A stretch of DNA of 64,000 bases from Octopus sinensis (taxonomy: Eukaryota): NCBI RefSeq assembly GCF_006345805.1, contig NC_043012.1, positions 15,686,001-15,750,000 on the forward strand, in the 5' to 3' direction. Below, one piece after another: positions 38,069 to 60,974 of this stretch. The notes beneath the pieces were generated by a model, which had not been told where the DNA came from, searched no databases, and saw nothing but the letters and a program-made list of their open reading frames with translations. Within the stretch, counting starts at the first letter, position 1; every line of letters begins with the position of its first letter. Both the position numbers and the translations under genes were made by a program.

Positions 38069-38386
38069 TCATAAAATTGTGTCTTCAATATTCATAGTGT
38101 CTTTTTCGGGTCTGAACTGGTCAATTGGTATGACGAGGCCCTCGGTTCCATCAAGTGGCTGCGAGTTGAAGTCATTAGGATGGCTTCTCATGGTCAAATT
38201 ATTCAGGTCATTGATTGCTTTGATGCTGTTTGAGTAGGATAGGTTGTTACCTGGATTGACACCATGATAAGAACTGCCAAGGCTGCTCCCTAATTTCTCT
38301 TCTTTCTCATCATGAAGGATAACATCATCACTGTAGGGGCTTTCGTTAATCAAAGCATCTCGTCGAGGGACCACAGTCACATGATA
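38069..38386 (-). CDS. D10C-mucin membrane protein, terminal exon (cytoplasmic tail)
   Basis: cattttacag|, phase 0. YHVTVVPRRDALINESPYSDD...SSYHGV...EKDTMNIEDTIL*. Confidence 0.8.
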   Translation of the reverse strand, partial: YHVTVVPRRDALINESPYSDDVILHDEKEEKLGSSLGSSYHGVNPGNNLSYSNSIKAINDLNNLTMRSHPNDFNSQPLDGTEGLVIPIDQFRPEKDTMNIEDTIL

Positions 38387-39224
38387 CTGTAAAATGAAAC
38401 ATCAAATAGATAAAAAAATGAATATTGTCAATTATAGAAGTTGCATGATATTTAAATGATACTTGTAATTAAAACCATTTAATAATTAACTGGACCAGGT
38501 ATATTTAAAGGGAAAATTTGACAAGTCAGTCAGCCACCGGCTGACACTCGCTGACGATACATCGAAGAGGCCAGGGAACAGAAGAAAGAAGAAGAAAGAC
38601 GTGCACCCAACACCAGAGCTGAAGACACCTTCGAAAGTGGGGGCCCCACCATGTCAAAACGGTAGAGGTGTAGGGGCCAAAACCGGACGTGGTTCCTCCT
38701 GATGATGTCTTGAGCTAACTGGATCCTATAAAGGAGCTGTTGTGGTAGCAGACCACGAAACACGGTTGTAATTCCTCCATGATGATAAAAAAGAGTGCAG
38801 GAGTAATATTATCAATTAATGATGTCGGCAGTTAATAATGGATCTTTTCTGGAACAAGTGAGTAATAATATGAGATTCAGCATGAAAAATTACATCAATA
38901 TACCAAATTTGAAAATGTTTACCTAATTCTAAAATTTCAGAAAGTGAAAGTCAAACGGAAAAGATCAGAGTAAGTTCATGGTCAGATGAGCATAATTTGA
39001 ATACTAAATTTTATACCTACAAATACAACTGAGATACAAGCAGTTTGAATTAGAAAGTTAATTTAACCAATTGCTCATAATTATCAATAATTCCTCAACA
39101 AGAGGTAATTGGAACCGCATATATACTAGCCAAGTTAATGTAGAATTTCACTTAAATTTCAAATAAAATATTAAGAGAAATAGATGATTTTATCGGAAAA
39201 TTCTTTGCTCAAATGCTACAAATT

Positions 39225-39585
39225 CATCATCATCATCGTTTAACGTCCGTTTTCCATGTTAGCATGGGTTGGACGGTTCGACTAGGGTCTGGGAAGCCAG
39301 GAGGCTGCACCAGGCTCCAGTCTGATCTGGCAGTGTTTCTACAGCTGGATGCCTTTCCTGACGCCAACCACTCCGTGAGTGTAGTGTGTGCTTTTTAGGT
39401 GCTACCGACACGGAAGCCAGTCATGGCGGCGCTGGCTTCGGTCACGTACAGATGGTGCTTTTTACGTGCCACCGACGCAGGTGCCAGCGGAGACTGGCAA
39501 CGGCCACGATCGGTTGGTGCTTTTTTCGTGCCACCGGCAGGGAAGCCAGTCAAGGCAGCGCTGGCATCGGCCACGTACGGATGAA
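39225..39585 (-). mobile_element. SINE family B with 3 subrepeats
   Basis: Family B tail and core plus ggtgctttttacgtgccaccg repeats. Confidence 0.88.
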
Positions 39586-40120
39586 TTCAAGATAAAAATT
39601 AGTTCTGATTCTTGGTACATTAGATGATATTAGATCTGTTGGCAATGTCATATATGGAACCATATTTTGTGCTTTCCTTAAACCAGGTGAGGTCATGCAC
39701 ACATTTGTAAGTCATTGTTTTTGTTGTAAATATTTTATCATCTAGAATTAAAAATTCAAGTTCTTTTTCTGCTTCGATTCTGTTGAACTTGTAAACGGGG
39801 TCAATAACCCCCATTCACTTACCCATTAAATCTATTGTTCCTTATTAACATTCTCATTCCTCCTATTATACAGGTGTTTGATTTTAGATCAAACAATCAT
39901 CATGTCATATAACCAACTGTCTATGCAAGCAGGTGAACCATTTCAACCTGGATCTCTCTATATTATTTGATCCAAGAAAGTTGTGGTTGGATATACCTGT
40001 TACTTGTTATAAATTTTCAACTGTTTCTTCGTTTTTTATTTACTTTTTTATTAATAACTGGCCGAAATTACAGAGTGATTCAAGGCCAAGTGTTTTATAC
40101 ATTGGCACTTACCAAACTAA

Positions 40121-40145
40121 TAATATATATATATATATATATATA

Positions 40146-40224
<79 letters not shown>

Positions 40225-40229
40225 ATATT

Positions 40230-40276
<47 letters not shown>

Positions 40277-40304
40277 ATAATATATATATATATATATAAT
40301 ATAT

Positions 40305-40340
<36 letters not shown>
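40121..40340. repeat. Long (TA)n/(TG)n microsatellite
   Basis: Direct reading. Confidence 0.95.
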
Positions 40341-40342
<2 letters not shown>

Positions 40343-40617
40343 GAGGCTCAATGGCCTAGTGGTTAGGGCAGCGGACTCGCGGTTTCGATTCCCAGACCGG
40401 GCGTTGTGTGTGTTTATTGAGCGAAAACACCTAAAAAGCTCCACGAGGCTCCGGCAGGGGGTGGTGATCCCTGGTGTACTCTTTCACCACTCTTTCTTCT
40501 GTTGGCCTGCTCGCTTAGCCAGCGGGGTGGCGTCATTCGAAGGCTAAAGCAATGCGAACGCATTGTGACCAGCGATGTGTAACAACGTCTGATTGTCTGG
40601 TCGGTCACGTGATCACG

Positions 40618-40620
<3 letters not shown>
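40339..40620 (+). mobile_element. SINE family D variant; a 3' fragment of it also at 35234-35345
   Basis: tggaggctcaatggcctagtggttagggcagcggactcgc...ggtcggtcacgtgat. Confidence 0.85.
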
Positions 40621-40660
<40 letters not shown>

Positions 40661-40662
40661 TG

Positions 40663-40912
40663 TAGAGTCACGTGGCTTAGTGATTCAGCATAATGTCAGC
40701 ATGATGATCGTAAGATTGTGGTTTCGATTCCTGGACCAGGCAACGCATGTTCTTGAGCAAAACACTTCATTTCACGTTGCTCCAGTCCACTCAGCTGGCA
40801 AAAGTGAGTAACGCTGCGATGGACTGGCGTCCCGTCCAGCTGGGGAACACATACACCATTGAAACCGGGAAACCGGGCCCATGAGCCTGGCTAGGCTTTA
40901 AAAGGGCGCATT
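40663..40912 (+). mobile_element. SINE family C
   Basis: Closely matches 11229-11490; flanked by (TA)n. Confidence 0.88.
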
Positions 40913-42342
40913 TATATATATATATATATACTCGTTTTGTGTTCTATTTTTCTGTTTGCATCACTAAACCAAATGTTTCATTGTTGATATCTTTTCATGT
41001 TAGGGGTGCTCATAGTTTACACTTGATAGATACTTTCATCTTGTCAGCATTATAGACCCCAGGACAAAGTAATGCATTAGGAATCCAACGTATATTAGGA
41101 ATCCACAGCATACATAGTTCGGCAGCAGGCCCCTAGATCCCTAAGATTGCCTGATCAACTGCCCAGTGGGTTTATGCTTAACCTGGCATTGCCAATAGGT
41201 ATCATTCAAACAGTGTTATTGTTACAACATGTAGTTCTTCTAATAGCTTTGATTGCTTTGAACTTACTTTTGTAGTAGAAGAGTGCATTTCATTGAAACA
41301 AATACTTTATTAGCAACATTGTAATATTGTTATACCCAGAGCTCAGAATATTGCTTAAGGAGACTGGAAAAAATTTATATCACTCAGAGTAGATTAGAGC
41401 TCTTACAAATATGTAAAAAGAGGAGAAATAAGACAGCAATAATAATTGGAACATCTGTTCGATTCTTTCAATACTTGCATCCTCTTCAAGAAACCACAAA
41501 TTGACAACAAGCACCATCTTTACAATAGAAATCTGTACAGCATTTAATTTCTTGCAGCACACGAGACTGCTTTTTTGTTTTAAGTCTTTAAACCAAAGAA
41601 AGAAACATTGTTTTCGTTTTCCAGTTGTTAGTGGCAATATTGACTACAAAAAGAAGAACAAGAGATAACAATTATTTCTTACACTAACACAAAGCTATCA
41701 TAGATATAGGTCCATAGAAAAGAGGAGTGATGCTGATGAGGCGTATGTTTTCCTCAAGTGTATTGAGTAAAATGTAAGTAATACTATATATGTAAAAACT
41801 ATAAAATGAATTCGGTATTGTCACTACACTACAGTACAAACGACCACAACATGACCATAGTGGTGGTTGTGATTGTGGTAGTGAGAAAGATGAGGATGAA
41901 GTGGGTGATGATAATACAGAAAATAATAATGAGGAGGAGGAGTAGGCGGAGAAGAAAGGGGGAAATGTATTTGTTCGTTAACATTGAAAGCAAAACAAAG
42001 ACAGTACGAAACGATGTTTTCTGTACATCGTTGATTGTTTTCGTTCGTAAATCATTGATGACGTCTCTTGTCAGTAACGAAGCGAATAATAAATCGAATG
42101 ATCTTGTGAATAGTTGATAGCATTGGGGGAAGTTGTCAGGTGTCACTTGTTACAAACACACGCATCCATACGCACGCATACATACGCATTCATACTCACT
42201 CTTTCTCTCTTCTGTCACAAACACACACGCAGACATTTACACGATCTAGAACCCACGTTTTATAAATATATTTCATAAACACACGGGTCTAAAAAAAATT
42301 CTCTCTCTCACGCACACGCTCATACCCAAAAATTACTCCACA

Positions 42343-42389
<47 letters not shown>

Positions 42390-42462
42390 GCACACGCGTA
42401 CATATGCTTTCATATTCAAAGGTCAGAGAAACTGAGAATAAAAAGGAAACAATTTGTCTCAC

Positions 42463-42618
42463 CTGTTCGGCTAACGCCCGATCCCAATGGCCCGAATGGC
42501 GTTGGCAATAGAGGTACATACAGCTGGATAGTAGGAGTATAAGACAAAGAAACCCAATTATCATTAAAATGATAAATAGAGCCAAATATTCTTGGAAGAT
42601 GTCCTGTGATGGTTCAGC
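42463..42618 (-). CDS. D10C-mucin membrane protein, transmembrane exon
   Basis: ccccaacag| ... |gtgaga, phase 0-0. AEPSQDIFQEYLALFIILMIIGFLCLILLLSSCMYLYCQRHSGHWDRALAEQ, a single TM helix. Confidence 0.9.
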
Positions 42619-42719
42619 CTGTTGGGGAGAGAGAGACATAGAAAGGATTGACGGTAAGGATAAAAAGAGAAAACCAAATGGAAAAATAATTTTATATGTG
42701 TTTGTGTGTGTGTGTGTGT

Positions 42720-42936
42720 ATTCTTTTACTTGTTTCAGACGCCAGACTGTGACCATGCCGGAGCACAATCTTGAAGAATTTTAGTCGAACAAACTGACTT
42801 TAAAAAAAAAAAAAAATTTTGTACCTATTCTATCGGGTACTGTGGCCGAACTGCTAGGTTTGGGGAACGTAAACACACCAATACCGGTTGTCAAACGGAG
42901 GCGAGGGACAAACACAAACATACACACACACACGTG

Positions 42937-42969
<33 letters not shown>

Positions 42970-43078
42970 CACACACACAATGAACTTTTCTGTTTCCGTC
43001 TACCAAATCCACTCACAAGCCTTTCGTTAGCCCCAGACTTGCCCAATGTGGCACGCAGTGGGACTGAACCCAGAGCAA
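42720..43078 (-). mobile_element. SINE family A (reverse)
   Basis: Reverse complement of the family A body; its tail lies about 100 nt upstream of the TM exon acceptor. Confidence 0.8.
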
Positions 43079-43334
43079 CGTTTATAATAATAATATTTTT
43101 TATTATAAATGATCTTACCATTCTTTTTACTTTACATGAAATAATCTTGACATTCTACAGTTGATTTATTTCCATTTATTTACGAGTATTATAAATTTTA
43201 TAGGTAAAATATTTTTCTGGGAACGAATTACGATTTATAATATTGCTACTATGGGATTTTATTGCTCTGCTTTCGAATTTTCGCTTTACGAGCAGTCTCC
43301 GGGAACAAATTAATTCGTGTATCGGGGCATTACT

Positions 43335-43353
43335 GTATATATATATATGTATA

Positions 43354-43434
<81 letters not shown>

Positions 43435-43463
43435 TAATATATATATAATATATATATATATAT

Positions 43464-43512
<49 letters not shown>

Positions 43513-43535
43513 TGTGTGTTGTGTGTGTGTGTGTT
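43335..43535. repeat. (TA)n/(TG)n microsatellite
   Basis: Direct reading. Confidence 0.95.
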
Positions 43536-43559
43536 TCATGTACTGAAAGCACGACAGAT

Positions 43560-44950
43560 TTTTTTAACACGTCTGGTGTCCTAGCACAAGCTTCGAGTAC
43601 TGCCCACATAGCATAACAAACTACATATGTGTCGATAGGATAAAGGAAAAAATAAGAAAAAGCGAGTAAGAAGTAGATATAGAAGGTGGAAAATTGTAAA
43701 AATGGAAAGCGGAAAAGAAAATAGAAAGAAGCAAAAGGAGAGGATTAGAACTATTACTCCTTAAACCGTAAAAATATGAGACTGAAAAGATAATGGCTTA
43801 CAGTCTGTAGTACAATTGTTCAATCCAGAGAGGGTGTTACTTGCCAATTCGTCAACAGGAACTTAGCTATATGCTTACAACCGCTGAAAATTTTGGATCG
43901 CAAATACAGCAGTGTGTTAGAGTTCTTAGATCTGAAAAGGGTCTGAGTTTTTTCAGTTACGCATAGCTTACATTATTTTTTTGTTCCGTTAACATATATA
44001 TGATGTGGATTTTTTCGACTATTTTCTACTTTGTCCTATGTGGTGTGGCGTTCGACTTCAAACCTCATACGTAGCTAGCCAACTTAGTAGCTTTACTTTT
44101 GTCCCTGTGTCGGAAGGAAGATATGTGATTAGCATAGCGATTTTTCAATTCGCCTTTAGATAGTCCGATATAGCTATTCTTATCGGTTGTGTTATCATCT
44201 AGCATTACTGTAACTTCTGCCTCATATATGATGGATTTAATCATACATCCCTGGTTGGGTGAACATGTTCCTGGGTCTCGACAGTTACAATAGGAAGTGG
44301 GCTCTTGGTGTTGTTTTTGTGTAATGATGCTTTTCATATTGAGACAGCAGCTGCATGATAATTTCACTGAGTGCCAGTTAAATATTTTCCTGTACCTGTG
44401 ATTTTCTGGAAAACGCTTGTTTTCGAGAGACAGGAAACTTTTACCTATGTTAGTTTTTACATTAAGGGAAAAGGTAGAGGTGAACCAAATCATTTTTCTA
44501 GGTCTATTTTCAGATCTATTATTATTATTATTATTATTATTATTCCGATTAACATTAGATGGTTTATAGATTAATTTATCCTTAAAGACATTATTGGCTA
44601 GAGCATTGTTGTAGTAGGAGGCTGTCTTCTGGAAAATTTCTTTAGAGAAAATGAGATTAGAAACTCTGATACTAATGTTAGCTATCAGATTTTTAAATAC
44701 TACAGTGGGGTAACAATACCGTTTATGTATATAGGAAAGTTTCTCGTTGGGATTTGGTAAAGTTTATAAGAGAAGGAGTTCAGATCCAGGAAAATATCTA
44801 AAAAGATCAACTTTAGATGTTTACACATATTACGATGAGCTTGAACAATTTAATCATAACAACTTGTTACATTTGGTGATCCCGACATGATTCTAACCTT
44901 CTCTACATATGTGTAGGCAGAACTGTACGACGATAAAAGAAAAAGGTTCG
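43560..44950 (-). mobile_element. Penelope-like element fragment (RT end plus GIY-YIG)
   Basis: PNEKLSYIHK..FKNLIANISIRVS..YNNALA..RPRKMIWF..CNCRDPGTC..KSIIYEAEV..SYIGLSKGELKNRYANHISSFRH. The 3' region holds a decayed hammerhead at about 43797-43832. Confidence 0.9.
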
Positions 44951-45014
44951 TAGTAAACATTGTTCAGACACTCGTATATTTACTATAAGACATTCACAAA
45001 ACTTTTTCTGTTAC

Positions 45015-45136
45015 CGTAATTGTTTGATTTGGCGTTACTGTCTTGTCGAAAGTTGTTATAACTGGTGTTATACTCGTTCTATGGGGAGTAGCAGGTGAAA
45101 CTGTCGAATTGTGTATGGAATATTTCTCTTTCCAGG
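45015..45136 (-). CDS. D10C-mucin membrane protein, second stalk exon (not in the ORF track)
   Basis: ttttttacag| ... |gtaaca, phase 1-0. AWKEKYSIHNSTVSPATPHRTSITPVITTFDKTVTPNQTIT; it resolves the phase mismatch between the 48 kb and 42 kb exons. Confidence 0.85.
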
Positions 45137-45195
45137 CTGTAAAAAATGGAATTCTCTTTTAACATTTAAAAAAGTACTTTGTAGTGGTTGAAATT

Positions 45196-45232
<37 letters not shown>

Positions 45233-45241
45233 TATATATAT

Positions 45242-45315
<74 letters not shown>

Positions 45316-45954: not shown

Positions 45955-45990
45955 GTATATACATATATATGTATATACATATATATATAT

Positions 45991-46051
<61 letters not shown>

Positions 46052-46127
46052 CATATATATGTATATATATATATATATACATATATATGTATATATATAA
46101 TATATATATATATATTATATATATACA

Positions 46128-46195
<68 letters not shown>
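45955..46195. repeat. Long imperfect (TA)n; further tracts at 45200-45315 and 45710-45795
   Basis: Direct reading. Confidence 0.95.
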
Positions 46196-46792: not shown

Positions 46793-47543
46793 CGAGTAAG
46801 CACTCAAAAGAAACCGGAAACGTTGTAGTTCAAGGTTCCGCCACTAGAAGCCACTTGACGCCACCCTCAGGCATCAGTCTGCTGACCGGCGTCGTACTTC
46901 CACGAGGTGCGTATTTGTTTGACAGTACTTCTCTTTTGTTGGTCGATTTTTTGCGATGGCTGAAACGAACGAACAGCGTGCTTCCGTGAAATTTTACTTT
47001 CTGCTGGGGCAAACGGAGACCGAAATAGTTGTGATGCTTCTAACAGCTTACAAAGACGTTGCCATGAAAACATCACAAAAATTCATGAACAGATCTTGGA
47101 GGAGCGTCCCAAAACAGTTAACGGACTTGTTGATATGACTGGTATGTCCTGGAGCTCCTGCCAACGAATTTTGAGCGAGGAATTGCGAAGGAAAAGTGTT
47201 GCAGCAAAATTTGGGCCTTGCTTGCTCACGGAAGATCAAAAGCAGTCACGGTTGAATGCGTGTCACGAACTGAAAGAACAGTTGTAAACCGATCCGGACC
47301 TATTTTTGAAGGTCATCACTGGTGACGAAAGCTGGTGCTACGGAATTAGCAGATGTGGAAGAGGTGAAGAAGAAAACGACGGAGGTGTTAAAAGGCAAGA
47401 TTTCCGGGGCTGTTTCAAACAGTGGAAAACGTATCTGAACCGATGCATTGATTCAAATAGAGAATACTTTGAAGGCGGTAAAAGTGCAGACAAGTGAATA
47501 AAAAAAATATTGCAAAATTCCGGTTTCTTTTGGGTACCCCTCG
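46793..47543 (+). mobile_element. Internally deleted mariner
   Basis: Degenerate TIRs (cgag..caaaagaaaccggaa / ccggtttcttttgggtacccctcg) with TA flanks. Remnants MAETNEQRASVKFYFLLGQTETE, KVITGDESWCYG and RCIDSNREYFEG. Confidence 0.85.
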
Positions 47544-48170: not shown

Positions 48171-48548
48171 CGGTTTCCTTTTTTTCTCCACTGCCGAAGT
48201 ATTTAAGTACTGAATCTTCGTCTTCTGTGGTGGTTTTTACTGTAACAGGCAATGTGGTGCTTTTCGTTCCTCTTACTGATCCTTTTGCAGGAAGTTTAGT
48301 GGTCAGGCTCTTGTCTGTAGTCACAGTGGCATTACGTCCTCCTTTCCTTGTTTTAATGTCTAAGATATTTGTAACGGAGCTTTTGGGTAAGTCTGTTGTT
48401 AAATTAGATCTAGTTGCACTTTCTACATTTACATCTTTTTCCGTTTGATTTACTGTGACGAAAGTTTGAGCCTGAATATCTGCAGTAGTTAAATTATGGG
48501 CATTTGAACCTATTGAGCTTATGAGAGGCGTCTCCAAAGTCGTTAGGT
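48171..48548 (-). CDS. D10C-mucin membrane protein, Thr/Ser-rich stalk exon
   Basis: tttttttag| ... |gtaatt, phase 1-1, 378 nt. DLTTLETPLISSIGSNAHNLTT...KTTTEDEDSVLKYFGSGEKKET, with several N-x-T sequons. Confidence 0.85.
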
Positions 48549-52085: not shown

Positions 52086-52178
52086 CTTTAATCATATCTT
52101 CTGTTGATACAAACGGTGAAATTTCATTTACATCACCACCATGACGGATAGTATAATTATTGCGATCAGGCTCATTTT
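52086..52178 (-). CDS. D10C-mucin membrane protein, linker exon
   Basis: atttcatag| ... |gtaaga, phase 1-1. NEPDRNNYTIRHGGDVNEISPFVSTEDMIK. Confidence 0.8.
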
Positions 52179-52417: not shown

Positions 52418-52800
52418 TGTGGCTATGTGGTAAGTAGCTTGCTTACGAACCACATGGTTCCGGGTTCAGTCCCACTGCGTGGCACCTTGGGCAAATGTCT
52501 TCTACTATAGCCTCGGATTTGGTTGACGGAAACTGAAGGAAGCCCGTCGTATATATGTATATCTCTATATATGTATATATGTGTGTGTATATGTTTGTGT
52601 GTCTGTGTTTGTCACCCCAACATCGCTTGACAACCGATGCTGGTGTGTTTACGTCTCCGTCACTTAGCGGTTGGCAAAAGAGACCCATAGAATAAGTACT
52701 AGGCTTACAAAGAATAAATCCTGTGGTCGATTTGCTCGACTAAAGGCTGTGCTCCAGCATGGCCGCAGTCAAACGACTGAAACAACTAAAAGAGTAAAAG
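52418..52800 (+). mobile_element. SINE family A
   Basis: Near-consensus copy. Confidence 0.9.
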
Positions 52801-53460
52801 AATCCACGGCGGACGCACCAAACAATACAATTCGCTGAATCTGACAAAGATCGAACCCGTGGCGCAATTGCCTACTTTTCATTGATTAACTTCTTACCTG
52901 CATTTCGTTTGAATTCACAATAAAATGAGGATTAGTAGGGCGCCTACGAGATATGGTAATCGATTTGAAATGAAATTGAAACTAATGTAAATTCGATTTT
53001 ACGAACGTCAAATAGGCAATTACCGAAGGCAATGTGTTAACGTTATTAAATCATTTCAGTTGGAACTGAAGTATCTCGAAAGGGGAAAAGTTAAATAAGT
53101 TTGCAGTATATTATGTCATCAACTGAAATCTTTAGTTTCGTATGCCTGTTATAGCAATTCTGAACTTCTGAACTATGTCCTTGGCGAAAGATCTAAATAT
53201 TAATGGCCCAGTCTATTTCTGTAAAAATATAAATACTATGGAAAGGTGGTTTTTAAATGTTTTAAAACAGGGTGGCTAGTGTTTTGTTTGGGTATTGTGC
53301 TAAGTTCCAAACACTAATGGGAAAGACAACAGGCAAGATATTCCAATATCTTAACTGAAATCCATTCCGCTTTCTGAAAAGTGCATCATGTGTTATTCAA
53401 GCATTGGTCGCGCGCCAGTGAAATGGGTTAAATTCTTACAATGTAATTCTTCCACAAGTA

Positions 53461-53506
<46 letters not shown>

Positions 53507-53789: not shown

Positions 53790-55080
53790 ACATTGCTTCA
53801 ACAGAGGAGTATTGACCCATAGCCACCATTTTGTATGAGTCTTCCCCGATTAAATGTTGCTTTGGCACACTTGTGCAAGTCAAATTCCATGTTAAAACTT
53901 TTCACAGTTGTTAGTAATCTCTCCAGATCATTATCATCTTTTGCATGTAGCTTGAGGTCATCAATATAAAAGAAGTGTGAGATGGTTCTATTAAAGATTT
54001 TACATTCATATTGTATATGTGATAGGGATATGAATTCTAAGCAAAAAAGTAATGGGCACAATGAGTCTCCTTGCTATATGCCTCGGTTAATCTTAATACT
54101 GCCAGATGTACTTATGATTTTATTATGAGTGAGGTGCAATTTTTTGTACCACGTGCCCATACTTTGGTGCAGAAAACCTTTAATAATTGGCGATATTTTG
54201 TACCAATCTAGAACTTTTACGATTCACGGGTGAAATACATGATCGAATGCCTTGCGGTAATGTATCCCCAGCTCTACTAAGATTATGGCTTTTTGAGGAG
54301 CAGCTTTTTGAGTATTATTCGGTTAATCAGAAGTTGAACTTCACAAACACAGAAATTTCTATAGCAGCCCTTTTGCACGAAGAATGTGTTGTTGTTCAAG
54401 AAATTGGTATGCGCGCTCTATTAGAATCGCTGTCAATATTTTGTAAGTGGTAGCAAGGCTTGTAGTTCTTCGTATTTTTAGATTCGTCATTTTTAGGCAG
54501 CACGTAGGTTATCCCTTGAGTTAGCCAAGATGCCGCTTTTTCTGGGATTTTCATTATGCCAGAAAAACATTCAGATAATTGCTTGTGTGATATTGCCAGA
54601 GCATTCAACTAAATGATTTTTTATCACATAATTCCCAAGGGATTTCCATTTAAGAGCCTTTGATATCACCATCAGCCCCTTGATGGTGATATCTTCCCAC
54701 ATTTTTCTTGTGCATTCACCATTCCTTGTTATCCTGTGATCCATTCATAATTTTCATTAAATCCCTTATTATTAGTCCATATACTTCTCCAGAAATTTTC
54801 TCATGCATTTCAGGCGGGTTCTTTAAATTCTATCGTTTCTTGTAAAGTTCTCTGTAAAATCTTTCCACGATCTGTTTTGAATATTTTGTTTTGTCTGTAG
54901 AAGTCATTTCTTTCATCAAACCTACGGAAGCGCAGTGACTTAAGCTGTAAATTTTGTTTTACTACTTCATCCATATCAACCAATTTGTGCTTGTGCTGTT
55001 TTGATTTCCTTGTGTTGACTTTGTTTTCTTTAGATAATTCATCTTAGCTAGAAAGTTCACTCCTGAGCAATTCATTTTCC
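53790..55080 (-). mobile_element. R4/Dong-type (RLE) non-LTR retrotransposon RT fragment
   Basis: WLTQGITYVLPKNDESKNTKNYKP and FFYIDDLKLHAKDDNDLERLLTTVKSF..KCAKATFNRG; multiple disruptions. Confidence 0.85.
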
Positions 55081-55796: not shown

Positions 55797-55833
<37 letters not shown>

Positions 55834-56463
55834 TGTATGATGGACTCTCCCGCCGAAGACGACATATGCGTACAGCTTTTGTCGAACGACCCGCACAAAT
55901 GATTTGCTTTATAGTGATCAAATGTATGTGCTGTGCATTAGCGCACGTCTTCCATCAAATCGTCGCTGCCTGAACAGATGCACGGTGTACCACATGTCTG
56001 GTGTCTAAGGGATGGTGAACAACTTGAGATGAAGTGTTTTGCTCAAGAATACAACGCACCACCCGGTCTTGGAATTTACCCTGCCACATTAAAGGCATTA
56101 AACTAATAATCTAGTAACAAATATTTCTTCACTGCATTTAAGTACGTTAGACTCTATTTAACTATGTTCTTCGTGTCGAAGGCATCTTTTAAAATGTTCA
56201 CCTGCCATTATCTTAAATTATCAAAGGGTTAAATTTTTCACTGAAAATCTTTCTTGTTTCAGTCACATAGTATTTTGAAACTACATGTATGGCCATGTTT
56301 CACTGATGAAGATTGTGGGGTTTCAGAAAAAGTGAGGTGGTACCAATTGTCATTGGAACCTTAGAAACAACGGGGCGGAGGCTCAAGGAGAGAACAAAAC
56401 ATTTAGCTTTCTGGATTGATAATTTTGTAAGTCATTCTTTGAAAAAGTTTCTTTGGTACTTAC

Positions 56464-56695
56464 GCAATATGGAACAGTAAGCGACTGGACATCTATCTGT
56501 CTTTTTTAGATTATAGATAAAGAAATCTCCGGAGCAATGTCGCATTTCGATACGCTTGGATAGCACACAGCAGTCCCATTTTCCGAGGATATCGAACGAT
56601 GAACATGCGGTAACGGAAATCGTGTTCCCGATAGCGGGCAAAGTCTGATTCTTCAAATCGATAAACATTCCCAGTTTCGTACCACAGAAATCGTT
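56464..56695 (-). CDS. D10C-mucin membrane protein, D8C/D10C domain second half
   Basis: cttttcag| ... |gtaagt, phase 0-1. NDFCGTKLGMFIDLKNQTLPAIGNTISVTACSSFDILGKWDCCVLSKRIEMRHCSGDFFIYNLKKTDRCPVAYCSIL has CGT, TAC, CC, C.G.F.Y.L and C...YC. Confidence 0.92.
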
Positions 56696-56802
56696 CTGAA
56701 AAAGAAAGAAAAGGGATTAACAAAAATTATGATTTTCTTTTCTTTTACATTGACACTCCTCACAAATGTGTAAGAGAATGGTTTGTCGAATAAAACTAAC
56801 CT

Positions 56803-56854
<52 letters not shown>

Positions 56855-57036
56855 ACAGTTCAATTTGCAAACTGCACCAGAATGAACGAAAGCGCTTATA
56901 TATGATATATGATATAAGTTATATGATGTATAAAAACATGTAATATACAAATAAATATCTGTAAATATAAAACCATCCGAATTTCTGAGTACCTCATTTC
57001 TTCTAGTATAAAATACCTGTACATCATCTCCAAACC

Positions 57037-57074
<38 letters not shown>

Positions 57075-57078
<4 letters not shown>

Positions 57079-58337
57079 GTTATCCCATAAATAATGCGAT
57101 TTTCTCAATTGCATCAACTAAAAGTCCGAGGGGTACGGGATAAACTACCTGCATCAACTTGCTATAAAAGTAGATAGTAATTTTACTTTGTCCTTATTCT
57201 TAGTGCAAGTTTTGAAGAGTGCAGTTCGAGTTTAACAGTTATTTTTTCAAAGCTGGAAATGACAAAGGAGTATGTATATTCGGCATATTTTGCTTTATGA
57301 GTTCAATAAAGGCAACAACGCAACGGAGAGTGCGAGGAATATTCATGCAGTCTATGGGGATCGGACAGTAAGCGTCAACGGTGGTTCCAGAAACACCGAA
57401 CCGGAAACTACAGCCGAGAAGACGAGCCTCGTCCTGGAAGATCTGTAGAGAGCGACGAGGACGTCCTGCAAACCCTGGCGGAAAAAAATCCTATCGTAAC
57501 TTCTGAGGAACTAGCAGAGAAGCTTGGATTTGGTCATTCAACCATTCATCGACACGTGCTTGCCATTGGAAAAGTCAGCAAATTGGATCAATGGGTTCCT
57601 CACAAACTTTCCAGGTCTGATTTCGCGCAGATAGAGAATGTGTTCTCTTCTTAGCTGTCACATCCCATGAATGAACCTTTTTTGGGACCAAATAGTGACA
57701 GGTGACGAGAAATAGGTTCTCTGTAAAAATGTAAAACGCCGAAGACGGTGGGAAGGGAAAGGAGAAACACCGGCACCCCAGGCTAAAGAAAGTCTTCCCC
57801 CATGTAAGGTGTTGTTATCTGTTTGGTGGGATATAAAAGGCTTAATTCATTTTGAACTTTTAAACCCAAACCAAGCAATAACAAGCGGGATCTGTTTCGA
57901 GTAGCTTGAGCGGTTTAAGTCAACGCTAGAAGAAAAACGATCATCTTTGGTTTCAAGACGAAAGATGTTCCTCCATCAGGATAATGCTCGGCTACATAAA
58001 GCAAGGATGAGATTCCAAAGGCTGGAGCAGTTTGAATGGGAAACGATGCCCCACCCACGATATTTGCCGGAGATTGCCCCATCTGTTTATTATTTATTCC
58101 AGTCTTCAAAATCATTTGGACGGAAAAAATATGAATTCTGCAGACGAGGTGAGAACAGTACTGGAAGAGTATTTTTCGTCACGGATGAGTGAAGTTTGGA
58201 AGAGGGGCCTTGTAAATCTACCAGAGAGATGGAAGAGCATTGTAGAAAATGAAGGAGAGCATATTTTAGATTAAAAAAGAACTTTGTTTTTCTTAATTTT
58301 GAAAAAAATATAAGAGCCGCATTATTCAGGGGATAAC

Positions 58338-58341
<4 letters not shown>
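57075..58341 (+). mobile_element. Full-length degenerate mariner inserted in (TA)n
   Basis: TIRs ttgggttatcccataaataatgcg / cgcattattcaggggataacccaa. Fragmented ORF 57259-58274 with WVPHKL, GDEK, HQDNA and PEIAPSVYYLF (third Asp replaced by Val). Confidence 0.93.
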
Positions 58342-58371
<30 letters not shown>

Positions 58372-58400
58372 TATTTCCGCGTGTAGTTTCTATTTGTAAC

Positions 58401-58518
58401 GAAAGGATGAAAGGCAAAAATCGACCTCGGCGGAATTTGAGCTCAGAATGTAGCGGCAGATGAAGTACCGCTAAGTATTTCGCCCGGCGCGCTAACGATT
58501 CTGCCACTTCGCCGCCTT
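58401..58518 (-). mobile_element. SINE family E 5' part
   Basis: Family E core next to the mariner. Confidence 0.8.
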
Positions 58519-58611
58519 TAATAATGGCTTCAAATTATGGCACAAGGACAGTAATTTTACGGGAGGAAGTATGTCGATTACCTCGGCCCGAATACTCAAG
58601 CATAAAGCTTT

Positions 58612-59420
58612 TTAGATTATTTACAGAATAGCACAGAAATAAAGAATAGGTGACCAAGAGTAAAGTAAGAGAAAAGGAGAAGAATTAAGTTCAAAGAGAA
58701 CATATTAAACAAACTGATGAGAAACTTTTGCATGGTCAGTTTTGGAAAGCCACTGAGAATGTGTATGGAACAAAATCCCGTGGCTGGTTGAAAAAAAGGC
58801 AATTGAAAAAAGAACCAGTGAGCTTTACCAACTGCTCAAGATCAACTCGAAAAAATATGTATATGGGGAGAAGGTGTCAACAAAATATAGAATATGTGTA
58901 GTTTGGGATGAAACGTTTCAGAATGTCCCAAGTTGGCCCAGAGAGAATATAAGAAATGGAGGCATGACTAAGTTGTAAAGGTTTTGCACTGGAAGCTTTG
59001 TTAGAATTGGGAGTTCGAAGCTAGATGTACTTGATATAACAGCCAGGTAGAAAGTGTACTTGAATTGGAAAAATGCTAGATATCATGTGATTTCTTCAAT
59101 TCAAAAGGCTAAGAAGATAGAAAATAACAACCCAGATATAACAATGACAGACAAAACAAAGCGAATTTACTTACTGATTGATCCATCATGTCTGTTTGAT
59201 TCCAGGATTGTGAAGAAAGAAGATGGAAAGTTAAAAAAATACAATCCCTAATAATTTGAGACTGCGTGATTTTGGAATATGGAATATGTAAAGGTTGTGC
59301 TTGTAATAACTGGTGCATTAGGGACTATGAATAATGACATGAACAAATAGTTAAAGGAGACTGGAATGCCTCTAAAGGAATAGGGAAGATCACGAGAAGG
59401 GTTTTGAGTATTTGAAGGCT
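58612..59420 (+). mobile_element. R4/Dong-type C-terminal fragment (restriction-like endonuclease)
   Basis: LHGQFWK..SECPKLAQREYKKWRHD..LHWKLC..QPRYNND/DKTKRIYLLIDPSCLFDSRIVKKE..KVVLVITGALGT across broken frames. Confidence 0.8.
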
Positions 59421-59491
59421 TATTGACGCATGCCATGATAGATCGTTAGCCACTATACGCATTTTTTTCTCTCCTTGTTTTTCCTGTGTCC

Positions 59492-59527
59492 CTTTCTGTA
59501 GAAGAGCGTAAGCTCGAAGCGTAAAAG
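59492..59527 (+). ncRNA. Hammerhead-like motif with variant core
   Basis: cttt-CTGTAGA-a-gagc gtaa gctc-GAAG-cg-TA-aaag. Stems I and II pair perfectly; the core differs at positions 6 and 15.1. Confidence 0.45.
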
Positions 59528-59618
59528 ACTTTTTCAATTTCCTGAGCGTTATACTAATACATCTGTTTGTTTTATACACCGCTTGTCTTTGTCTTTTGTT
59601 TTTTTCGTGAACTCTCCC

Positions 59619-59633
59619 TATATATATATATAT

Positions 59634-59681
<48 letters not shown>

Positions 59682-59690
59682 GTATGTATA

Positions 59691-59751
<61 letters not shown>

Positions 59752-59752
59752 G

Positions 59753-59804
<52 letters not shown>

Positions 59805-59814
59805 TATATGTATG

Positions 59815-59900
<86 letters not shown>

Positions 59901-59945
59901 TATATATGTATGTATGTATATATGTGTGTGTGTGTGTATGCATGT
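59619..59945. repeat. Long imperfect (TA)n/(TATG)n microsatellite
   Basis: Direct reading; source of many spurious YIYI ORFs. Confidence 0.97.
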
Positions 59946-60535
59946 ACATGGTGGCCTAGGATGTGAGTGGAAGTGACTGTAGATTGGAAATAAGTAGTGT
60001 AGACATAAGAAACGAGAGGAAAAGGGATTCAGTGGAAGAAAGAAAGATCAGCGAAATCAGATATGGAAGAGAGTATATCTTCAGGGGAGGGCAGAGTTGG
60101 CATAGATGAGAGCTTCCGTTTAGTGAACAGGAGACATTGAAATCTCATGTTCCTGTAGGTTCTGTGCATGCAGATGGGAGTCTTTTCAGTAACTCTTTTC
60201 TGTGAGGTGTCTAGACAATATGACTTTCGATCTGTCTTTCGTGCACTTGTTGCATGGTTTTCACTTTGGGGAATTCAGTCTAGTACTAGGTAGAATTTAC
60301 CCCTGCTGGTTACAAAGTATGGATTTGATTTTTAGTTCGTGGAAGTAGTTAGCTAAAGATCTTTTATTTCACCTTCTGAAAATTCTAAAGAAGAGTGAGA
60401 ATTGTAGTTCAACTTAAAACTGTTACACGTCAAACCAACTACGGGCCTAGTGCATGTGAGGGAGAGCTCTTGTGTAGCGTTTTAACGACTCGAGCTTATG
60501 CGTAAAATATATGAGAAAAAAGTTTGTTTTTTTAC

Positions 60536-60684
60536 CTTGATGCACTGAGTTGGAATAATGGCTGGCTGTTTACCAATGATAAAGCGGTACCATCCTTCTG
60601 TTAGCGTATTGTCGCAGAGAGTATCATTATCCTTTGTAACATGTCTTGATGAAACTTCTTTTTCCGTGTAATGATCACAAGGAT
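60536..60684 (-). CDS. D10C-mucin membrane protein, D8C/D10C domain first half
   Basis: tttttcag| ... |gtaaaa, phase 1-0. DPCDHYTEKEVSSRHVTKDNDTLCDNTLTEGWYRFIIGKQPAIIPTQCIK shows the DPC..Y and CD...GWYRF signature of the uromodulin/GP2/OIT3 domain. Confidence 0.92.
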
Positions 60685-60860
60685 CTGAAAAAGCCAGATT
60701 AAAAATAGAATAAATATACAAAATATGAGCATATATAAACGGAATGTGACCACCTCATCCCGCCAAAAGGAAAAAAAGAGCAAACAATTAAAACGACGAA
60801 ACGCCACATAGTTATTTGGAAATAGAAAAATTAGCAAAAGAAGCAAAAACAAGAGCTTAC

Positions 60861-60974
60861 CTTTCGAAGTAACTTCAGTGCAGGACAGGGAAAAAGCTGA
60901 AAGTAGAAATATAGAAGTTTGAGGAAATGTACCTAACACAACGATTAGCGACGACGAAGGTGGTTCTGTAGTTT
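60861..60974 (-). CDS. D10C-mucin membrane protein, hydrophobic signal-like exon (5' boundary uncertain)
   Basis: Strong donor aaag|gtaagc in phase 1 matches the next exon. Frame ETTEPPSSSLIVVLGTFPQTSIFLLSAFSLSCTEVTSK; putative acceptor ttttactacag. No in-frame ATG inside this exon. Confidence 0.6.

What the first reader, a model, noticed from the sequence alone, without database searches (positions are those of the whole stretch)
38069..60974. Uromodulin/GP2-type D10C domain on a mucin stalk with TM and cytoplasmic tail, no ZP domain
Seen: eight phase-compatible exons give signal-like segment, 10-Cys D8C/D10C domain, about 200-aa T/S-rich stalk with many N-x-T sequons, TM helix and a tail of about 120 aa. 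Established: in vertebrate uromodulin and GP2 this domain sits on GPI-anchored ZP proteins and presents glycans that act as decoys for bacterial FimH. Inference: here it is displayed on a receptor-like type I protein, a candidate epithelial microbe-sensing or adhesion molecule. From remembered alignments, the decoy-glycan positions are not sequons here (GP2 NYT = HYT; uromodulin YNLT = YNLK), while the NGTHP-equivalent sequon is kept (NQTLP), suggesting a different ligand mode.
Basis: partly seen in the sequence, partly recalled or inferred. Interest (0 to 1): 0.7.

Follow-up and report, generated by a model that had tools for sequence, protein, structure and literature searches.

The report
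Octopus membrane glycoprotein with D10C head
This octopus gene encodes a single-pass membrane glycoprotein tipped with the domain that vertebrate uromodulin and GP2 use as a bacterial decoy, but here it sits on a sugar-rich stalk with an intracellular tail resembling podocalyxin's instead of a filament-forming ZP module; the gene is real, conserved across molluscs and an annelid, and uncharacterised.

Summary
On the minus strand, eight exons with canonical AG/GT sites (60896..38069) translate to 494 residues plus a stop. They are 98.2% identical to residues 12-505 of an annotated Octopus vulgaris protein.

One correction is needed. The "signal-like" stretch 60974-60897 is intron read-through. 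The ATG exon lies about 30 kb upstream in O. vulgaris, outside the window.

The D10C domain is certain:
- Pfam D8C_UMOD scores above its cut-off.
- All 10 Cys align to GP2.
- The AlphaFold model has pLDDT 95 and TM-score 0.79 to GP2 structure 7p6r.

No ZP, EGF or beta-hairpin is present. Cuttlefish RNA-seq contigs carry the whole D10C-stalk-TM-tail ORF uninterrupted.

The same architecture occurs in gastropods, bivalves and the annelid Owenia. The TM and juxtamembrane segment is 95-100% identical across cephalopods, against 46-50% for D10C between octopus and cuttlefish-type orthologs.

A new finding is that the TM and cytoplasmic tail resemble vertebrate podocalyxin. The hhalign probability is 96.5-97.6%, and shuffled controls score far lower. 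Shared blocks are ENP..E.M, W[IV]VP[IL]D.L and a C-terminal EDT-x-L, which fits a PDZ ligand.

Most likely this is an apical, scaffold-anchored surface glycoprotein with a D10C head. Microbe sensing is untested. It is a new variant of known kinds, of moderate interest.

The parts
60861..60896 (-). Coding exon 2 (36 nt), encoding the C-terminal part of the signal peptide and the first residues of the mature protein (AFSLSCTEVTSK). Its last base starts the Asp codon of DPC.
   Evidence: The acceptor is tatttctactttcag and the donor is gtaagc. The exon is 100% identical to O. vulgaris L011 40514-40549. No ATG lies upstream in frame. Exon 1 sits 30.5 kb upstream in O. vulgaris and is absent from the window.
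60536..60684 (-). Coding exon 3, the N-terminal part of the D10C domain (DPCDHY...TQCIK; Cys 1-3). It includes HYT (60673..60665) at the position of the GP2 N65 sequon, and an NDT sequon (60628..60620).
56464..56695 (-). Coding exon 4, the C-terminal part of the D10C domain (NDFCGT...VAYCSIL; Cys 4-10). It includes the NQT sequon (56650..56642) and YNLK (56515..56504) at the position of the UMOD N275 sequon.
52086..52178 (-). Coding exon 5, a linker (QNEPDRNNYTIRHGGDVNEISPFVSTEDMIK) carrying an NYT sequon.
   Evidence: Located by tblastn with the orthologs. Splice sites were read. The model was verified.
48171..48548 (-). Coding exon 6, the main T/S-rich stalk (126 codons) with four N-x-T sequons.
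   Evidence: No tandem repeat lies in this exon. AlphaFold2 pLDDT is below 50 here.
45015..45136 (-). Coding exon 7, the second stalk exon (WKEKYSIHNSTVSPATPHRTSITPVITTFDKTVTPNQTIT). It aligns with the structured juxtamembrane module of decapodiform orthologs, of which it appears to be a degenerate remnant.
42463..42618 (-). Coding exon 8, holding the pre-TM segment, the TM helix (42588..42508, YLALFIILMIIGFLCLILLLSSCMYLY) and the juxtamembrane segment CQRHSGHWDRALAEQ.
   Evidence: The AlphaFold2 helix covers residues 354-389 at pLDDT 85-88. The segment is 100% identical among octopods and 95% identical to decapodiform orthologs.
38069..38386 (-). Coding exon 9, the cytoplasmic tail plus the stop codon. 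It holds the conserved blocks INESPYSDDVILHDE (38350..38306), DGTEGLVIPIDQF (38152..38114) and the C-terminal EDTIL (38086..38072), which fits a class I PDZ ligand. It also holds the cephalopod-specific Tyr motifs SSYHGV and LSYSNSI.

Best explanation
The locus is the ortholog, in a close congener of Octopus vulgaris, of an uncharacterised gene family found across Lophotrochozoa.

Shown: it encodes a type I membrane glycoprotein. In order it has a signal peptide, a single D10C domain directly at the mature N-terminus, a ~200-residue T/S-rich stalk bearing N-glycan sequons and predicted to be disordered, one TM helix, and a ~120-residue cytoplasmic tail. It has no beta-hairpin, EGF or ZP module and no GPI-type end. 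It therefore cannot polymerise into UMOD/GP2-type filaments, and it lacks the two glycan sites that make those proteins FimH decoys.

Supported by profile comparison: the TM and tail are related to those of vertebrate podocalyxin. The conserved blocks occur in the same order: ENP..E.M..E, then NG.W[IV]VP[IL]D.L, then the C-terminal EDT-x-[LF].

Inferred mechanism: the protein sits in the apical membrane of epithelial cells. Its C-terminal T-x-L/F docks to a NHERF/EBP50-type PDZ scaffold, and the juxtamembrane region docks to ERM proteins, tying it to cortical actin as in podocalyxin. The glycosylated stalk holds the D10C head above the glycocalyx. There the head acts as a protein- or glycan-binding module rather than as a presenter of a fixed high-mannose glycan. 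The near-invariant TM segment in cephalopods suggests an additional partner within the membrane.
For: Gene model:
- Eight canonical exons give a product 98.2% identical to the O. vulgaris protein.

D10C domain:
- Pfam scores above its cut-off.
- PDB GP2/UMOD match at E = 6.5e-10 to 3.6e-8 with ten aligned Cys.
- The AF2 model has pLDDT 95 and TM 0.79 to 7p6r, and only GP2/UMOD match.

No ZP, EGF or GPI:
- Pfam scans of 13 family members show D8C_UMOD, in some a weak LDLa match, and never ZP.
- The literature defines the decoy module as beta-hairpin plus D10C, with the FimH glycans at UMOD N275 and GP2 N65 (PMC8930769). Here those positions read K and H.

Transcript evidence:
- An uninterrupted 545-aa ORF lies on 2.2-2.9 kb contigs from 85 or more runs. 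Two of these runs are identified as Sepia esculenta larval RNA-seq.

Family:
- A TM+tail profile searched against 1.84 billion representatives finds only 10 proteins.
- Every hit that extends to its N-terminal region (Mytilus, Haliotis, Gigantopelta, Sinanodonta and the partial Owenia record) has the layout D10C, S/T-rich region, TM and tail ending EDT-x-L/F.
- The three other new hits (81-258 aa) cover only tail or TM regions.

Podocalyxin link:
- hhalign of the lophotrochozoan TM+tail against the PODXL TM+tail gives Prob 96.5%, E = 9.4e-10, score 58.5.
- 400 column-shuffled controls score 11-12 +/- 2-3, with a maximum of 24.3.
- Non-cephalopod members against PODXL give Prob 97.6%, E = 4e-12, with 96 columns aligned end to end.
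- Cephalopods against non-cephalopods give Prob 99.3%.
- An HMM of the lophotrochozoan tails scores PODXL fragments up to 30.6 bits.
- Pfam CD34_antigen is the best non-D8C hit for two cuttlefish-type orthologs (E = 0.011-0.037).

Function:
- The PODXL tail function (DTHL with NHERF1/2, juxtamembrane ezrin binding) is taken from PMC8227556.

Constraint pattern:
- TM plus juxtamembrane is 95-100% identical across cephalopods, the distal tail 52-53%, D10C 46-50% and the stalk ~20% in the octopus to decapodiform comparison.
- All 9 amino-acid differences from O. vulgaris lie in the ectodomain.
Against: - Pfam CD34_antigen never reaches its gathering score. The best value is 16 bits against 26.3, it matches only 2 of 11 tail segments, and it sits among TM-driven noise hits.
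- The unbiased profile search of 1.84 billion proteins returned no vertebrate CD34-family protein at E <= 0.001.
- The cephalopod tails alone match PODXL only weakly (Prob 52%, E = 1.5e-4). The PODXL HMM gives the octopus protein 7 bits. The link for this gene therefore rests on transitivity through gastropod, bivalve and annelid members.
- The matching blocks are short, acidic, linear motifs that could be convergent.
- The podocalyxin comparison was driven by a hypothesis, with one target chosen after seeing the motif.
- Octopods lack the structured juxtamembrane module.
- The stalk is proline-poor and non-repetitive, which is unlike classical sialomucin domains.
- No localisation, binding or expression-site data exist for any member.
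- No octopus transcript was available here.
Confidence: 0.55

Rival explanations
1. The protein is an epithelial microbe-sensing or adhesion receptor: D10C binds a microbial or self ligand, and the cytoplasmic tail transduces a signal.
For: - The topology is type I with a long, conserved tail.
- Cephalopods share a tail insert with two invariant tyrosines, S-x-Y-x-G-V and L/I-S-Y-x-N-S. By my own reading these fit ITIM-like and pY-x-N consensus patterns.
- The ectodomain evolves fast between close species, with 9 non-synonymous against 2 synonymous differences, as surface recognition molecules often do.
- The vertebrate relatives of D10C act in host-microbe interactions (PMC8930769).
Against: - Pfam scans of the tail segments returned no recognised signalling domain above threshold.
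- The tyrosine motifs are confined to cephalopods and absent from the other family members.
- The conserved core of the tail matches a scaffold-binding tail, that of podocalyxin.
- The substitution counts are far too small for a selection test.
- No ligand or expression-site data exist.
Confidence: 0.2
2. The tail resemblance to podocalyxin is convergent: short acidic linear motifs plus a PDZ ligand. On this view the family is a lophotrochozoan-specific transmembrane mucin-like protein unrelated to the CD34 family. It would still be a surface glycoprotein with a D10C head.
For: - Pfam CD34_antigen stays below threshold.
- No vertebrate hit appeared in the 1.84-billion-protein profile search.
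- The similarity is concentrated in roughly 55-96 columns of low-complexity, acidic sequence.
- NCBI's pipeline calls the Mytilus member 'mucin-3B-like'.
Against: - Three or four blocks occur in the same order, with the same spacing class, from the TM to the very C-terminus.
- The hhalign score of 58-71 compares with 11 +/- 2-3 for column-shuffled profiles of identical composition.
- Reciprocal HMM scores reach 19.5-30.6 bits for the least derived members.
Confidence: 0.25
3. The protein is a UMOD/GP2-type lectin decoy. D10C presents a high-mannose glycan that traps fimbriated bacteria, perhaps after the ectodomain is shed.
For: The D10C fold is essentially that of GP2. D10C carries one or two sequons in the window protein, NDT and NQT.
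Against: - Both decoy sequon positions are non-sequons here.
- The beta-hairpin that forms the glycan-protecting groove is absent.
- No D10C sequon is conserved, even among octopods.
- There is no ZP module for polymerisation.
- The sequence shows no SEA-type G/SVVV site and no dibasic cleavage site (own reading).
Confidence: 0.07
4. The finding is a gene-model artefact. The D10C exons and the TM/tail exons belong to two adjacent genes that only appear phase-compatible.
For: No transcript from an octopus was available here. The introns are long, up to about 8 kb, and rich in transposons.
Against: - The same end-to-end architecture sits on single uninterrupted ORFs in cuttlefish RNA-seq contigs from 85 or more runs.
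- It is also found in independent annotations from gastropods, bivalves and an annelid.
- All eight junctions are canonical and in phase.
Confidence: 0.02

Closest known systems
D10C (formerly D8C) domain of uromodulin, GP2, OIT3/LZP and the teleost omcins
   Same: The fold is the same and all ten cysteines are present. Foldseek gives TM 0.79 and rmsd 2.1 A to GP2 7p6r, and Pfam PF23283 scores above its cut-off. The DPC, GWYRF, CC and YC signature positions are conserved.
   Different: The vertebrate proteins pair D10C with a beta-hairpin, EGF domain(s), a ZP polymerisation module and a GPI anchor, and they present a high-mannose glycan to FimH (PMC8930769; PMC11415648). Here there is no hairpin, EGF, ZP or GPI. 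Both decoy sequons are absent. D10C sits at the tip of a TM protein with a ~120-aa tail.
Podocalyxin (PODXL) and the CD34 family of sialomucins
   Same: - Both are type I proteins with a Ser/Thr-rich glycosylated ectodomain, a single TM and a conserved acidic tail.
- The tail blocks are collinear: ENP..E.M against ENGYHDNPTLEVME, then G.W[IV]VP[IL]D.L against DSWIVPLDNL, then a C-terminal EDT-x-L against EEDTHL.
- hhalign gives Prob 96.5-97.6%.
- The C-terminus fits a class I PDZ ligand, like DTHL, which binds NHERF1/2 (PMC8227556).
   Different: - No CD34-family member is known to carry a D10C domain (own knowledge).
- Pfam PF06365 is not reached.
- Octopods lack a structured juxtamembrane globular domain.
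- The stalk is proline-poor.
- The cephalopod tail has a lineage-specific insert of about 30 aa with two conserved Tyr.
- The cephalopod TM is under far stronger constraint than expected for a passive anchor.
[quoted passage not shown]
   Same: It is listed alongside GP2, UMOD and the ZP protein LZP/OIT3 as a mammalian D10C-containing protein (PMC8930769, Extended Data Fig. 1 legend). That it has no ZP module is my own knowledge. If so, D10C without ZP is not unprecedented.
   Different: VWDE is a large secreted multi-domain protein (own knowledge). It is not a TM protein with a stalk and a conserved tail.
Membrane-tethered mucins with PDZ-binding tails (MUC3, MUC12, MUC17)
   Same: These are type I proteins with a glycosylated stalk. 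From my own knowledge they carry a C-terminal class I PDZ ligand. The Mytilus family member is auto-named 'mucin-3B-like'.
   Different: No SEA domain is detected by Pfam in any member. The stalk exons hold no PTS tandem repeats. The sequence shows no SEA autoproteolysis motif.

Membership tests
UMOD/GP2/OIT3-type D10C-ZP proteins | D10C domain with ten conserved Cys and the GP2 fold | tested here: met
   Pfam scores 33.7 bits against 27. phmmer to 7p6r gives E = 6.5e-10 with all Cys aligned. The AF2 model has pLDDT 95 and TM 0.79 to 7p6r (modelled on the 97%-identical O. vulgaris domain).
UMOD/GP2/OIT3-type D10C-ZP proteins | Disulfide-stapled beta-hairpin preceding D10C, giving the bipartite decoy module | tested here: not met
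   Only TEVTSK lies between the predicted signal-peptide cleavage site and DPC. No Cys pair is present there. The definition comes from PMC8930769.
UMOD/GP2/OIT3-type D10C-ZP proteins | ZP module (ZP-N/ZP-C) and at least one EGF domain | tested here: not met
   No ZP or EGF family appears in Pfam scans of 13 members at E <= 1. The cuttlefish transcripts contain none.
UMOD/GP2/OIT3-type D10C-ZP proteins | GPI anchor, with no cytoplasmic domain | tested here: not met
   The hydrophobic helix at residues 359-385 is followed by a conserved 120-aa tail.
UMOD/GP2/OIT3-type D10C-ZP proteins | N-glycan sequon at the UMOD N275 or GP2 N65 position (the FimH decoy glycan) | tested here: not met
   The sequence reads YNLK at the UMOD N275 position and HYT at the GP2 N65 position. 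The same holds across the family.
CD34/podocalyxin family | Type I topology with a Ser/Thr-rich, heavily glycosylated ectodomain | tested here: inconclusive
   The topology criterion is met. The stalk has S+T 28%, seven N-x-T sequons and is predicted disordered, but Pro is only 5% and there are no repeats. Glycosylation itself cannot be tested here.
CD34/podocalyxin family | Match to Pfam PF06365 (CD34_antigen) at the gathering score | tested here: not met
   The best score is 16.2 bits (E = 0.011) against a cut-off of 26.3, and only in cuttlefish-type and one JGI member. The octopus proteins have no hit.
CD34/podocalyxin family | Conserved cytoplasmic tail ending in D-T-x-L, a PDZ ligand | tested here: met
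   EDT is invariant in all 11 members, with endings TIL, TVL, TKL, TQL, TKF and TRF. PODXL ends EEDTHL.
CD34/podocalyxin family | Profile-level similarity of the TM and tail to podocalyxin | tested here: met
   hhalign gives Prob 96.5% (E = 9.4e-10). Non-cephalopod members give 97.6% over 96 columns. Shuffled controls reach at most 24.3 against a real score of 58.5. Cephalopods alone give only Prob 52%.
CD34/podocalyxin family | Binding of the tail to NHERF1/2 and ezrin, with apical localisation | not testable with these tools
   This needs pull-down and localisation experiments.
SEA-domain transmembrane mucins (MUC1/3/12/13/17) | SEA domain next to the membrane, and PTS tandem repeats | tested here: not met
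   Pfam finds no SEA hit in any member. TRF finds no repeats in the stalk exons.

The most novel reading that the evidence does not exclude
The lophotrochozoan D10C-stalk-TM-tail family may be the protostome counterpart of the vertebrate CD34/podocalyxin family. If so, the podocalyxin-type TM and PDZ/ERM-docking tail would predate vertebrates. In molluscs and annelids it would be coupled to a D10C head. That would link two vertebrate kidney and gut surface systems, uromodulin/GP2 and podocalyxin, in one ancestral-type molecule. It would also make the unknown ligand function of D10C testable in a non-polymerising, cell-anchored context.
Probability: 0.35. Interest if true: 0.65.

Novelty: new variant of a known kind. 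Interest (0 to 1): 0.5.

Why it matters
D10C is known functionally only from polymerising, GPI-anchored ZP proteins such as uromodulin and GP2. There it scaffolds a decoy glycan and is a hotspot for kidney-disease mutations.

This family shows the same fold used in a different way. D10C is a solitary head on a cell-anchored stalk, without the hairpin, the decoy sequons or the ZP module. The arrangement is conserved from annelids to cephalopods. D10C therefore probably has an older, glycan-independent binding role that could be studied here.

If the tail is truly podocalyxin-like, the CD34/podocalyxin chassis is not a vertebrate invention. That it is usually regarded as vertebrate-specific is my own impression; three literature searches here returned nothing relevant. 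The family would then give an invertebrate entry point to apical-membrane and glycocalyx organisation.

For cephalopod biology it is a candidate apical surface protein of skin, gill, gut or symbiotic epithelia.

All database records of this family are labelled 'uncharacterized'.

Tried and rejected
1. There is no ATG, the O. vulgaris model splices in at 60896, and the ATG exon is 30.5 kb upstream. My first boundary of 60890 was a miscount and was corrected to 60896.
2. A seven-exon model lacking the 93-nt linker exon was superseded once the orthologs revealed 52178..52086.
3. A word-indexed search with a D10C profile returned only short proteins of 99-216 aa, mostly unnamed metagenome or exon-level calls. 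It did show that D10C exists in a coral. It was of no use for an architecture survey.
4. The full-length AlphaFold2 run with 8 sequences gave mean pLDDT 40. It was informative only for the TM helix and for disorder. A D10C-only run with 64 sequences was used instead.
The O. vulgaris ortholog was used, and I tried no other route.
6. The O. bimaculoides protein is not on record in the contig index.
7. Pfam scans for CD34_antigen or SEA gave only sub-threshold or no hits.
8. Literature searches for D8C/uromodulin in molluscs or cephalopods, and for podocalyxin in invertebrates, found nothing relevant.
9. dN/dS against O. vulgaris is about 0.86 overall, but it rests on only 12 differing codons. 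That is too few to claim selection.

Full report
**What is in the sequence**

The window is AT-rich eukaryotic DNA (GC 0.26-0.41), full of TA/CA microsatellites. It is 95.4-98.6% identical to Octopus vulgaris chromosome OX597828.1 over the collinear blocks. It therefore comes from O. vulgaris' closest relatives or from a divergent haplotype.

The finding lies on the minus strand. I rebuilt the gene from stop-free stretches, reading of the splice sites and tblastn with orthologs. The window holds eight exons, all with AG acceptors, GT donors and compatible phases:

| Exon | Coordinates | Content |
|---|---|---|
| 2 | 60896..60861 | end of signal peptide |
| 3 | 60684..60536 | D10C, N-terminal part |
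| 4 | 56695..56464 | D10C, C-terminal part |
| 5 | 52178..52086 | linker |
| 6 | 48548..48171 | main stalk |
| 7 | 45136..45015 | second stalk exon |
| 8 | 42618..42463 | TM helix and juxtamembrane segment |
| 9 | 38386..38069 | tail and stop |

They encode 494 residues plus a stop, 98.2% identical to residues 12-505 of the annotated O. vulgaris protein P0001.

Only the 5' boundary is wrong:
- The stretch 60974-60897 has no in-frame ATG and is the polypyrimidine end of an intron.
- In O. vulgaris the first coding exon is ATGATTACAAAATATATTTTTCTGTTTTCCTTAG|GTAAGT, encoding MITKYIFLFSL.
- That exon lies 30.5 kb upstream of exon 2 and is not in the window.

**The D10C domain**

The domain encoded by exons 3 and 4 passes every test:
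- It exceeds Pfam's cut-off for D8C_UMOD (33.7 against 27 bits).
- It matches the GP2 and uromodulin chains of the PDB at E = 6.5e-10 to 3.6e-8 over its full length, with all ten cysteines aligned.
- An AlphaFold2 model of the 97%-identical O. vulgaris domain, built on a 64-sequence alignment, has mean pLDDT 95.
- Foldseek against the PDB returns only GP2 and uromodulin entries below E = 1e-3. The best is 7p6r at TM 0.79 and rmsd 2.1 A over 125 columns.

GP2 N65 (NYT) corresponds to HYT. UMOD N275 (YNLT) corresponds to YNLK. NGTHP corresponds to NQTLP.

- The decoy module of GP2/UMOD is a beta-hairpin plus D10C, and the FimH-binding glycan sits in the groove between them (PMC8930769). Here D10C starts six residues after the predicted signal cleavage site, so there is no hairpin.
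- The 'kept' NQT sequon reads NQP in O. vulgaris, NQS in O. bimaculoides and Argonauta, and is absent in most decapodiform orthologs. No D10C sequon is conserved in the family.

**The rest of the protein**

Between the last D10C cysteine and the pre-TM segment lie 207 residues. They have 28% S+T, only 5% Pro, seven N-x-T sequons and no tandem repeats in the coding exons. They are predicted disordered (pLDDT below 50). 'T/S-rich glycosylated stalk' is accurate. 'Mucin' in the strict PTS-repeat sense is not shown.

The TM helix (residues 359-385) is predicted with pLDDT 85-88. It is followed by a tail of about 120 residues. Pfam finds no ZP, EGF or SEA domain and no signalling domain.

**Are the D10C and TM exons really joined?**

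A homology search found orthologs with the same end-to-end architecture:
- O. vulgaris, 505 aa
- O. bimaculoides LOC106883806, 480 aa
- Argonauta hians, 510 aa
- four clusters of 541-545-aa decapodiform proteins

The decapodiform proteins sit as uninterrupted ORFs with UTR-like flanks on 2.2-2.9 kb contigs assembled from single sequencing runs. One variant occurs in 85 runs. Two of the runs (SRR19578113, SRR25114245) are Sepia esculenta larval RNA-seq according to PMC10141105 and PMC10442824. One cluster includes an Acanthosepion pharaonis protein.

An intronless ORF spanning what are nine exons over more than 50 kb in octopus is transcript evidence that D10C, stalk, TM and tail form one mRNA with no ZP module. 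No octopus transcript could be retrieved here.

**A conserved lophotrochozoan family**

A profile of the TM and tail was searched against 1.84 billion representative proteins. It returned only ten hits at E <= 0.001. Apart from the cephalopods, the named hits are:
- Mytilus
- Haliotis asinina XP_067683246
- Gigantopelta aegis XP_041350107
- Sinanodonta woodiana
- the annelid Owenia fusiformis CAH1783961

Each of these named hits has an N-terminal D10C, sometimes an LDLa-like module, a long S/T-rich region, a TM helix and a tail ending EDT-[KQR]-[LF]. Three further short hits (81-258 aa) cover only tail or TM regions. All named records are labelled uncharacterised or unnamed.

The constraint pattern within cephalopods is striking. 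The figures below compare octopus with decapodiform orthologs:

| Region | Identity |
|---|---|
| Pre-TM, TM and juxtamembrane (57 residues) | 95% (100% among octopods) |
| Distal tail | 52-53% |
| D10C | 46-50% |
| Stalk | ~20% |

All nine amino-acid differences from O. vulgaris lie in the ectodomain. There are 9 non-synonymous against 3 synonymous codon changes overall, too few for a selection test.

**The tail resembles podocalyxin**

Pfam's CD34/podocalyxin model was the best non-D8C hit for two cuttlefish-type proteins, though below threshold (E = 0.011-0.037). The tails of the gastropod and annelid members end ...NGW[VI]VP[IL]D...EDT-x-L. I recognised this as like podocalyxin's ...DSWIVPLDNLTKDD..EEEDTHL.

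I fetched podocalyxin TM/tail fragments from birds, a lizard, bowfin, catfishes, sturgeon and paddlefish. I aligned them and compared profiles:

| Comparison | Prob | E-value | Score | Columns |
|---|---|---|---|---|
| 11 lophotrochozoan TM+tails vs PODXL | 96.5% | 9.4e-10 | 58.5 | 55 |
| Five gastropod, freshwater-mussel, annelid and unnamed members vs PODXL | 97.6% | 4e-12 | 71.0 | 96 (TM to C-terminus) |
| Cephalopods alone vs PODXL | 52% | 1.5e-4 | 30.9 | 59 |
| Cephalopods vs non-cephalopods | 99.3% | 3.3e-20 | 115.9 | 119 |

Column-shuffled controls of identical composition scored 10.9 +/- 2.0 (maximum 18.4) and 11.8 +/- 2.8 (maximum 24.3) over 400 shuffles. For the cephalopod-only comparison the shuffles gave 11.8 +/- 2.6, with a maximum of 21.5.

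A plain HMM of the lophotrochozoan tails scores paddlefish and sturgeon podocalyxin at 26-31 bits. The podocalyxin HMM scores Owenia at 19.5 bits, Gigantopelta at 17.2 bits and octopus at 7 bits.

The similarity is therefore not compositional. It is strongest in the least derived members and reaches the octopus gene by transitivity.

Against family membership:
- Pfam PF06365 is never reached.
- The unbiased 1.84-billion-protein search found no vertebrate protein.
- The matched blocks are short linear motifs.

I therefore say the protein 'works like, and is probably related to, the podocalyxin tail'. I do not file the protein as a CD34-family member.

**Mechanism**

- Shown: a type I glycoprotein with a D10C head, a disordered sequon-rich stalk, a TM helix and a conserved tail ending in T-x-L/F. 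There is no polymerisation module and there are no decoy sequons.
- From established knowledge: podocalyxin's DTHL binds the PDZ domains of NHERF1/2. Its juxtamembrane region binds ezrin. Together they link an anti-adhesive apical sialomucin to cortical actin (PMC8227556).
- Inferred: the octopus protein is an apical surface glycoprotein anchored in the same way. D10C is displayed as a binding head rather than a glycan presenter. The near-invariant cephalopod TM and juxtamembrane segment implies an additional partner in or at the membrane.
Its support is limited to cephalopod-specific tyrosine motifs and a fast-evolving ectodomain.

**Comparison and novelty**

D10C without ZP is not unprecedented. 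VWDE is listed among mammalian D10C proteins (PMC8930769), and from my own knowledge it lacks a ZP module. The teleost omcins keep the D10C-EGF-ZP-GPI plan (PMC11415648).

What is new is a conserved family with a D10C head on a transmembrane, podocalyxin-like chassis. Three literature searches found no description of it.

I rate it a new variant of known kinds, with moderate interest (0.5). It would rate higher if the podocalyxin homology and an apical, PDZ-dependent localisation were confirmed.

Noticed in passing
window 36067-37011 (-): A Tc1/mariner-type transposase remnant lies about 1 kb downstream of the gene's stop codon. It consists of two adjacent stop-free stretches separated by one stop codon. 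They match HTH_Tnp_Tc3_2 (52 bits) and DDE_3 (28.2 bits, just under the cut-off).
   Followed up: partly
window 53801-54073 (-), inside the intron between exons 4 and 5: A fragment of a reverse transcriptase (FYIDDLKL...) matches Pfam RVT_1 at E = 3e-4. It is probably a decayed LINE-type element.
   Followed up: partly
window 31684-32025 (+) and 44068-44763 (-): Two ORFs carry Cys-rich, GIY-YIG-like motifs, which could mark Penelope-like or similar elements. The first matches Pfam GIY-YIG weakly (E = 2e-4). The second, a 232-aa stop-free stretch in the intron between exons 7 and 8, has no Pfam hit.
   Followed up: partly
window 46956-47500 (+) and 57272-58274 (+), both in introns: These stretches look like mariner transposase pieces (for example ...ARLHKARMRFQRLEQFEWETMPHPRYLPEIAPSVYYLFQS). 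Only weak HTH hits were found for 57310-57651, and none for the other pieces tested.
   Followed up: partly
window 30347-30773 and 52419-52801; similar translated motifs at about 8223-8660, 23690-24019, 30240-30575 and 42775-43161: An interspersed repeat of about 400 bp recurs in the window. It matches several places in the O. vulgaris locus at 82-91% identity and translates as ...RLPNPLT...GYSRRHLPKMPRSGTEPG.... It is probably a SINE-like element. I did not classify it.
   Followed up: no
window 60897-60912 (-) compared with O. vulgaris exon 1 (L011 10001-10034): The intron end just upstream of exon 2 translates in frame as ...SIFLLS. That mimics the real exon-1 peptide YIFLFSL, and the two DNA stretches are similar T-rich sequences. 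I did not resolve whether it is chance or an old duplication.
   Followed up: partly
Decapodiform orthologs P0005-P0008, residues ~300-385; gastropod and annelid members P0092, P0093, P0096: These members have a juxtamembrane module of about 90-110 aa that looks structured (PAELIFLLNG...ILFWAYDKDGN...VEEALG). Pfam's CD34_antigen model matches it weakly (E = 0.011-0.037). In octopods it is reduced to a short T/S-rich remnant in exon 7. I did not test its fold, whether SEA-like or like the podocalyxin globular domain.
   Followed up: partly
ENA metagenome contigs of 113-623 kb holding P0016, P0018, P0019, P0021, P0023, P0025, P0029, P0030 and P0046: Several small D10C-only predicted proteins of 127-145 aa occur repeatedly on the same long metagenome contigs. 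They may be exon-level gene calls on eukaryotic contigs carrying tandem D10C arrays, as in the teleost omcins. I did not examine them.
   Followed up: no
window 59580-59960, 45196-45315, 45956-46195 and many other places: Long TA-, TATG- and CA-type microsatellites fill much of the introns. They generate the many spurious 'YIYIYI' and 'CVCVCV' ORFs in the ORF list.
   Followed up: no
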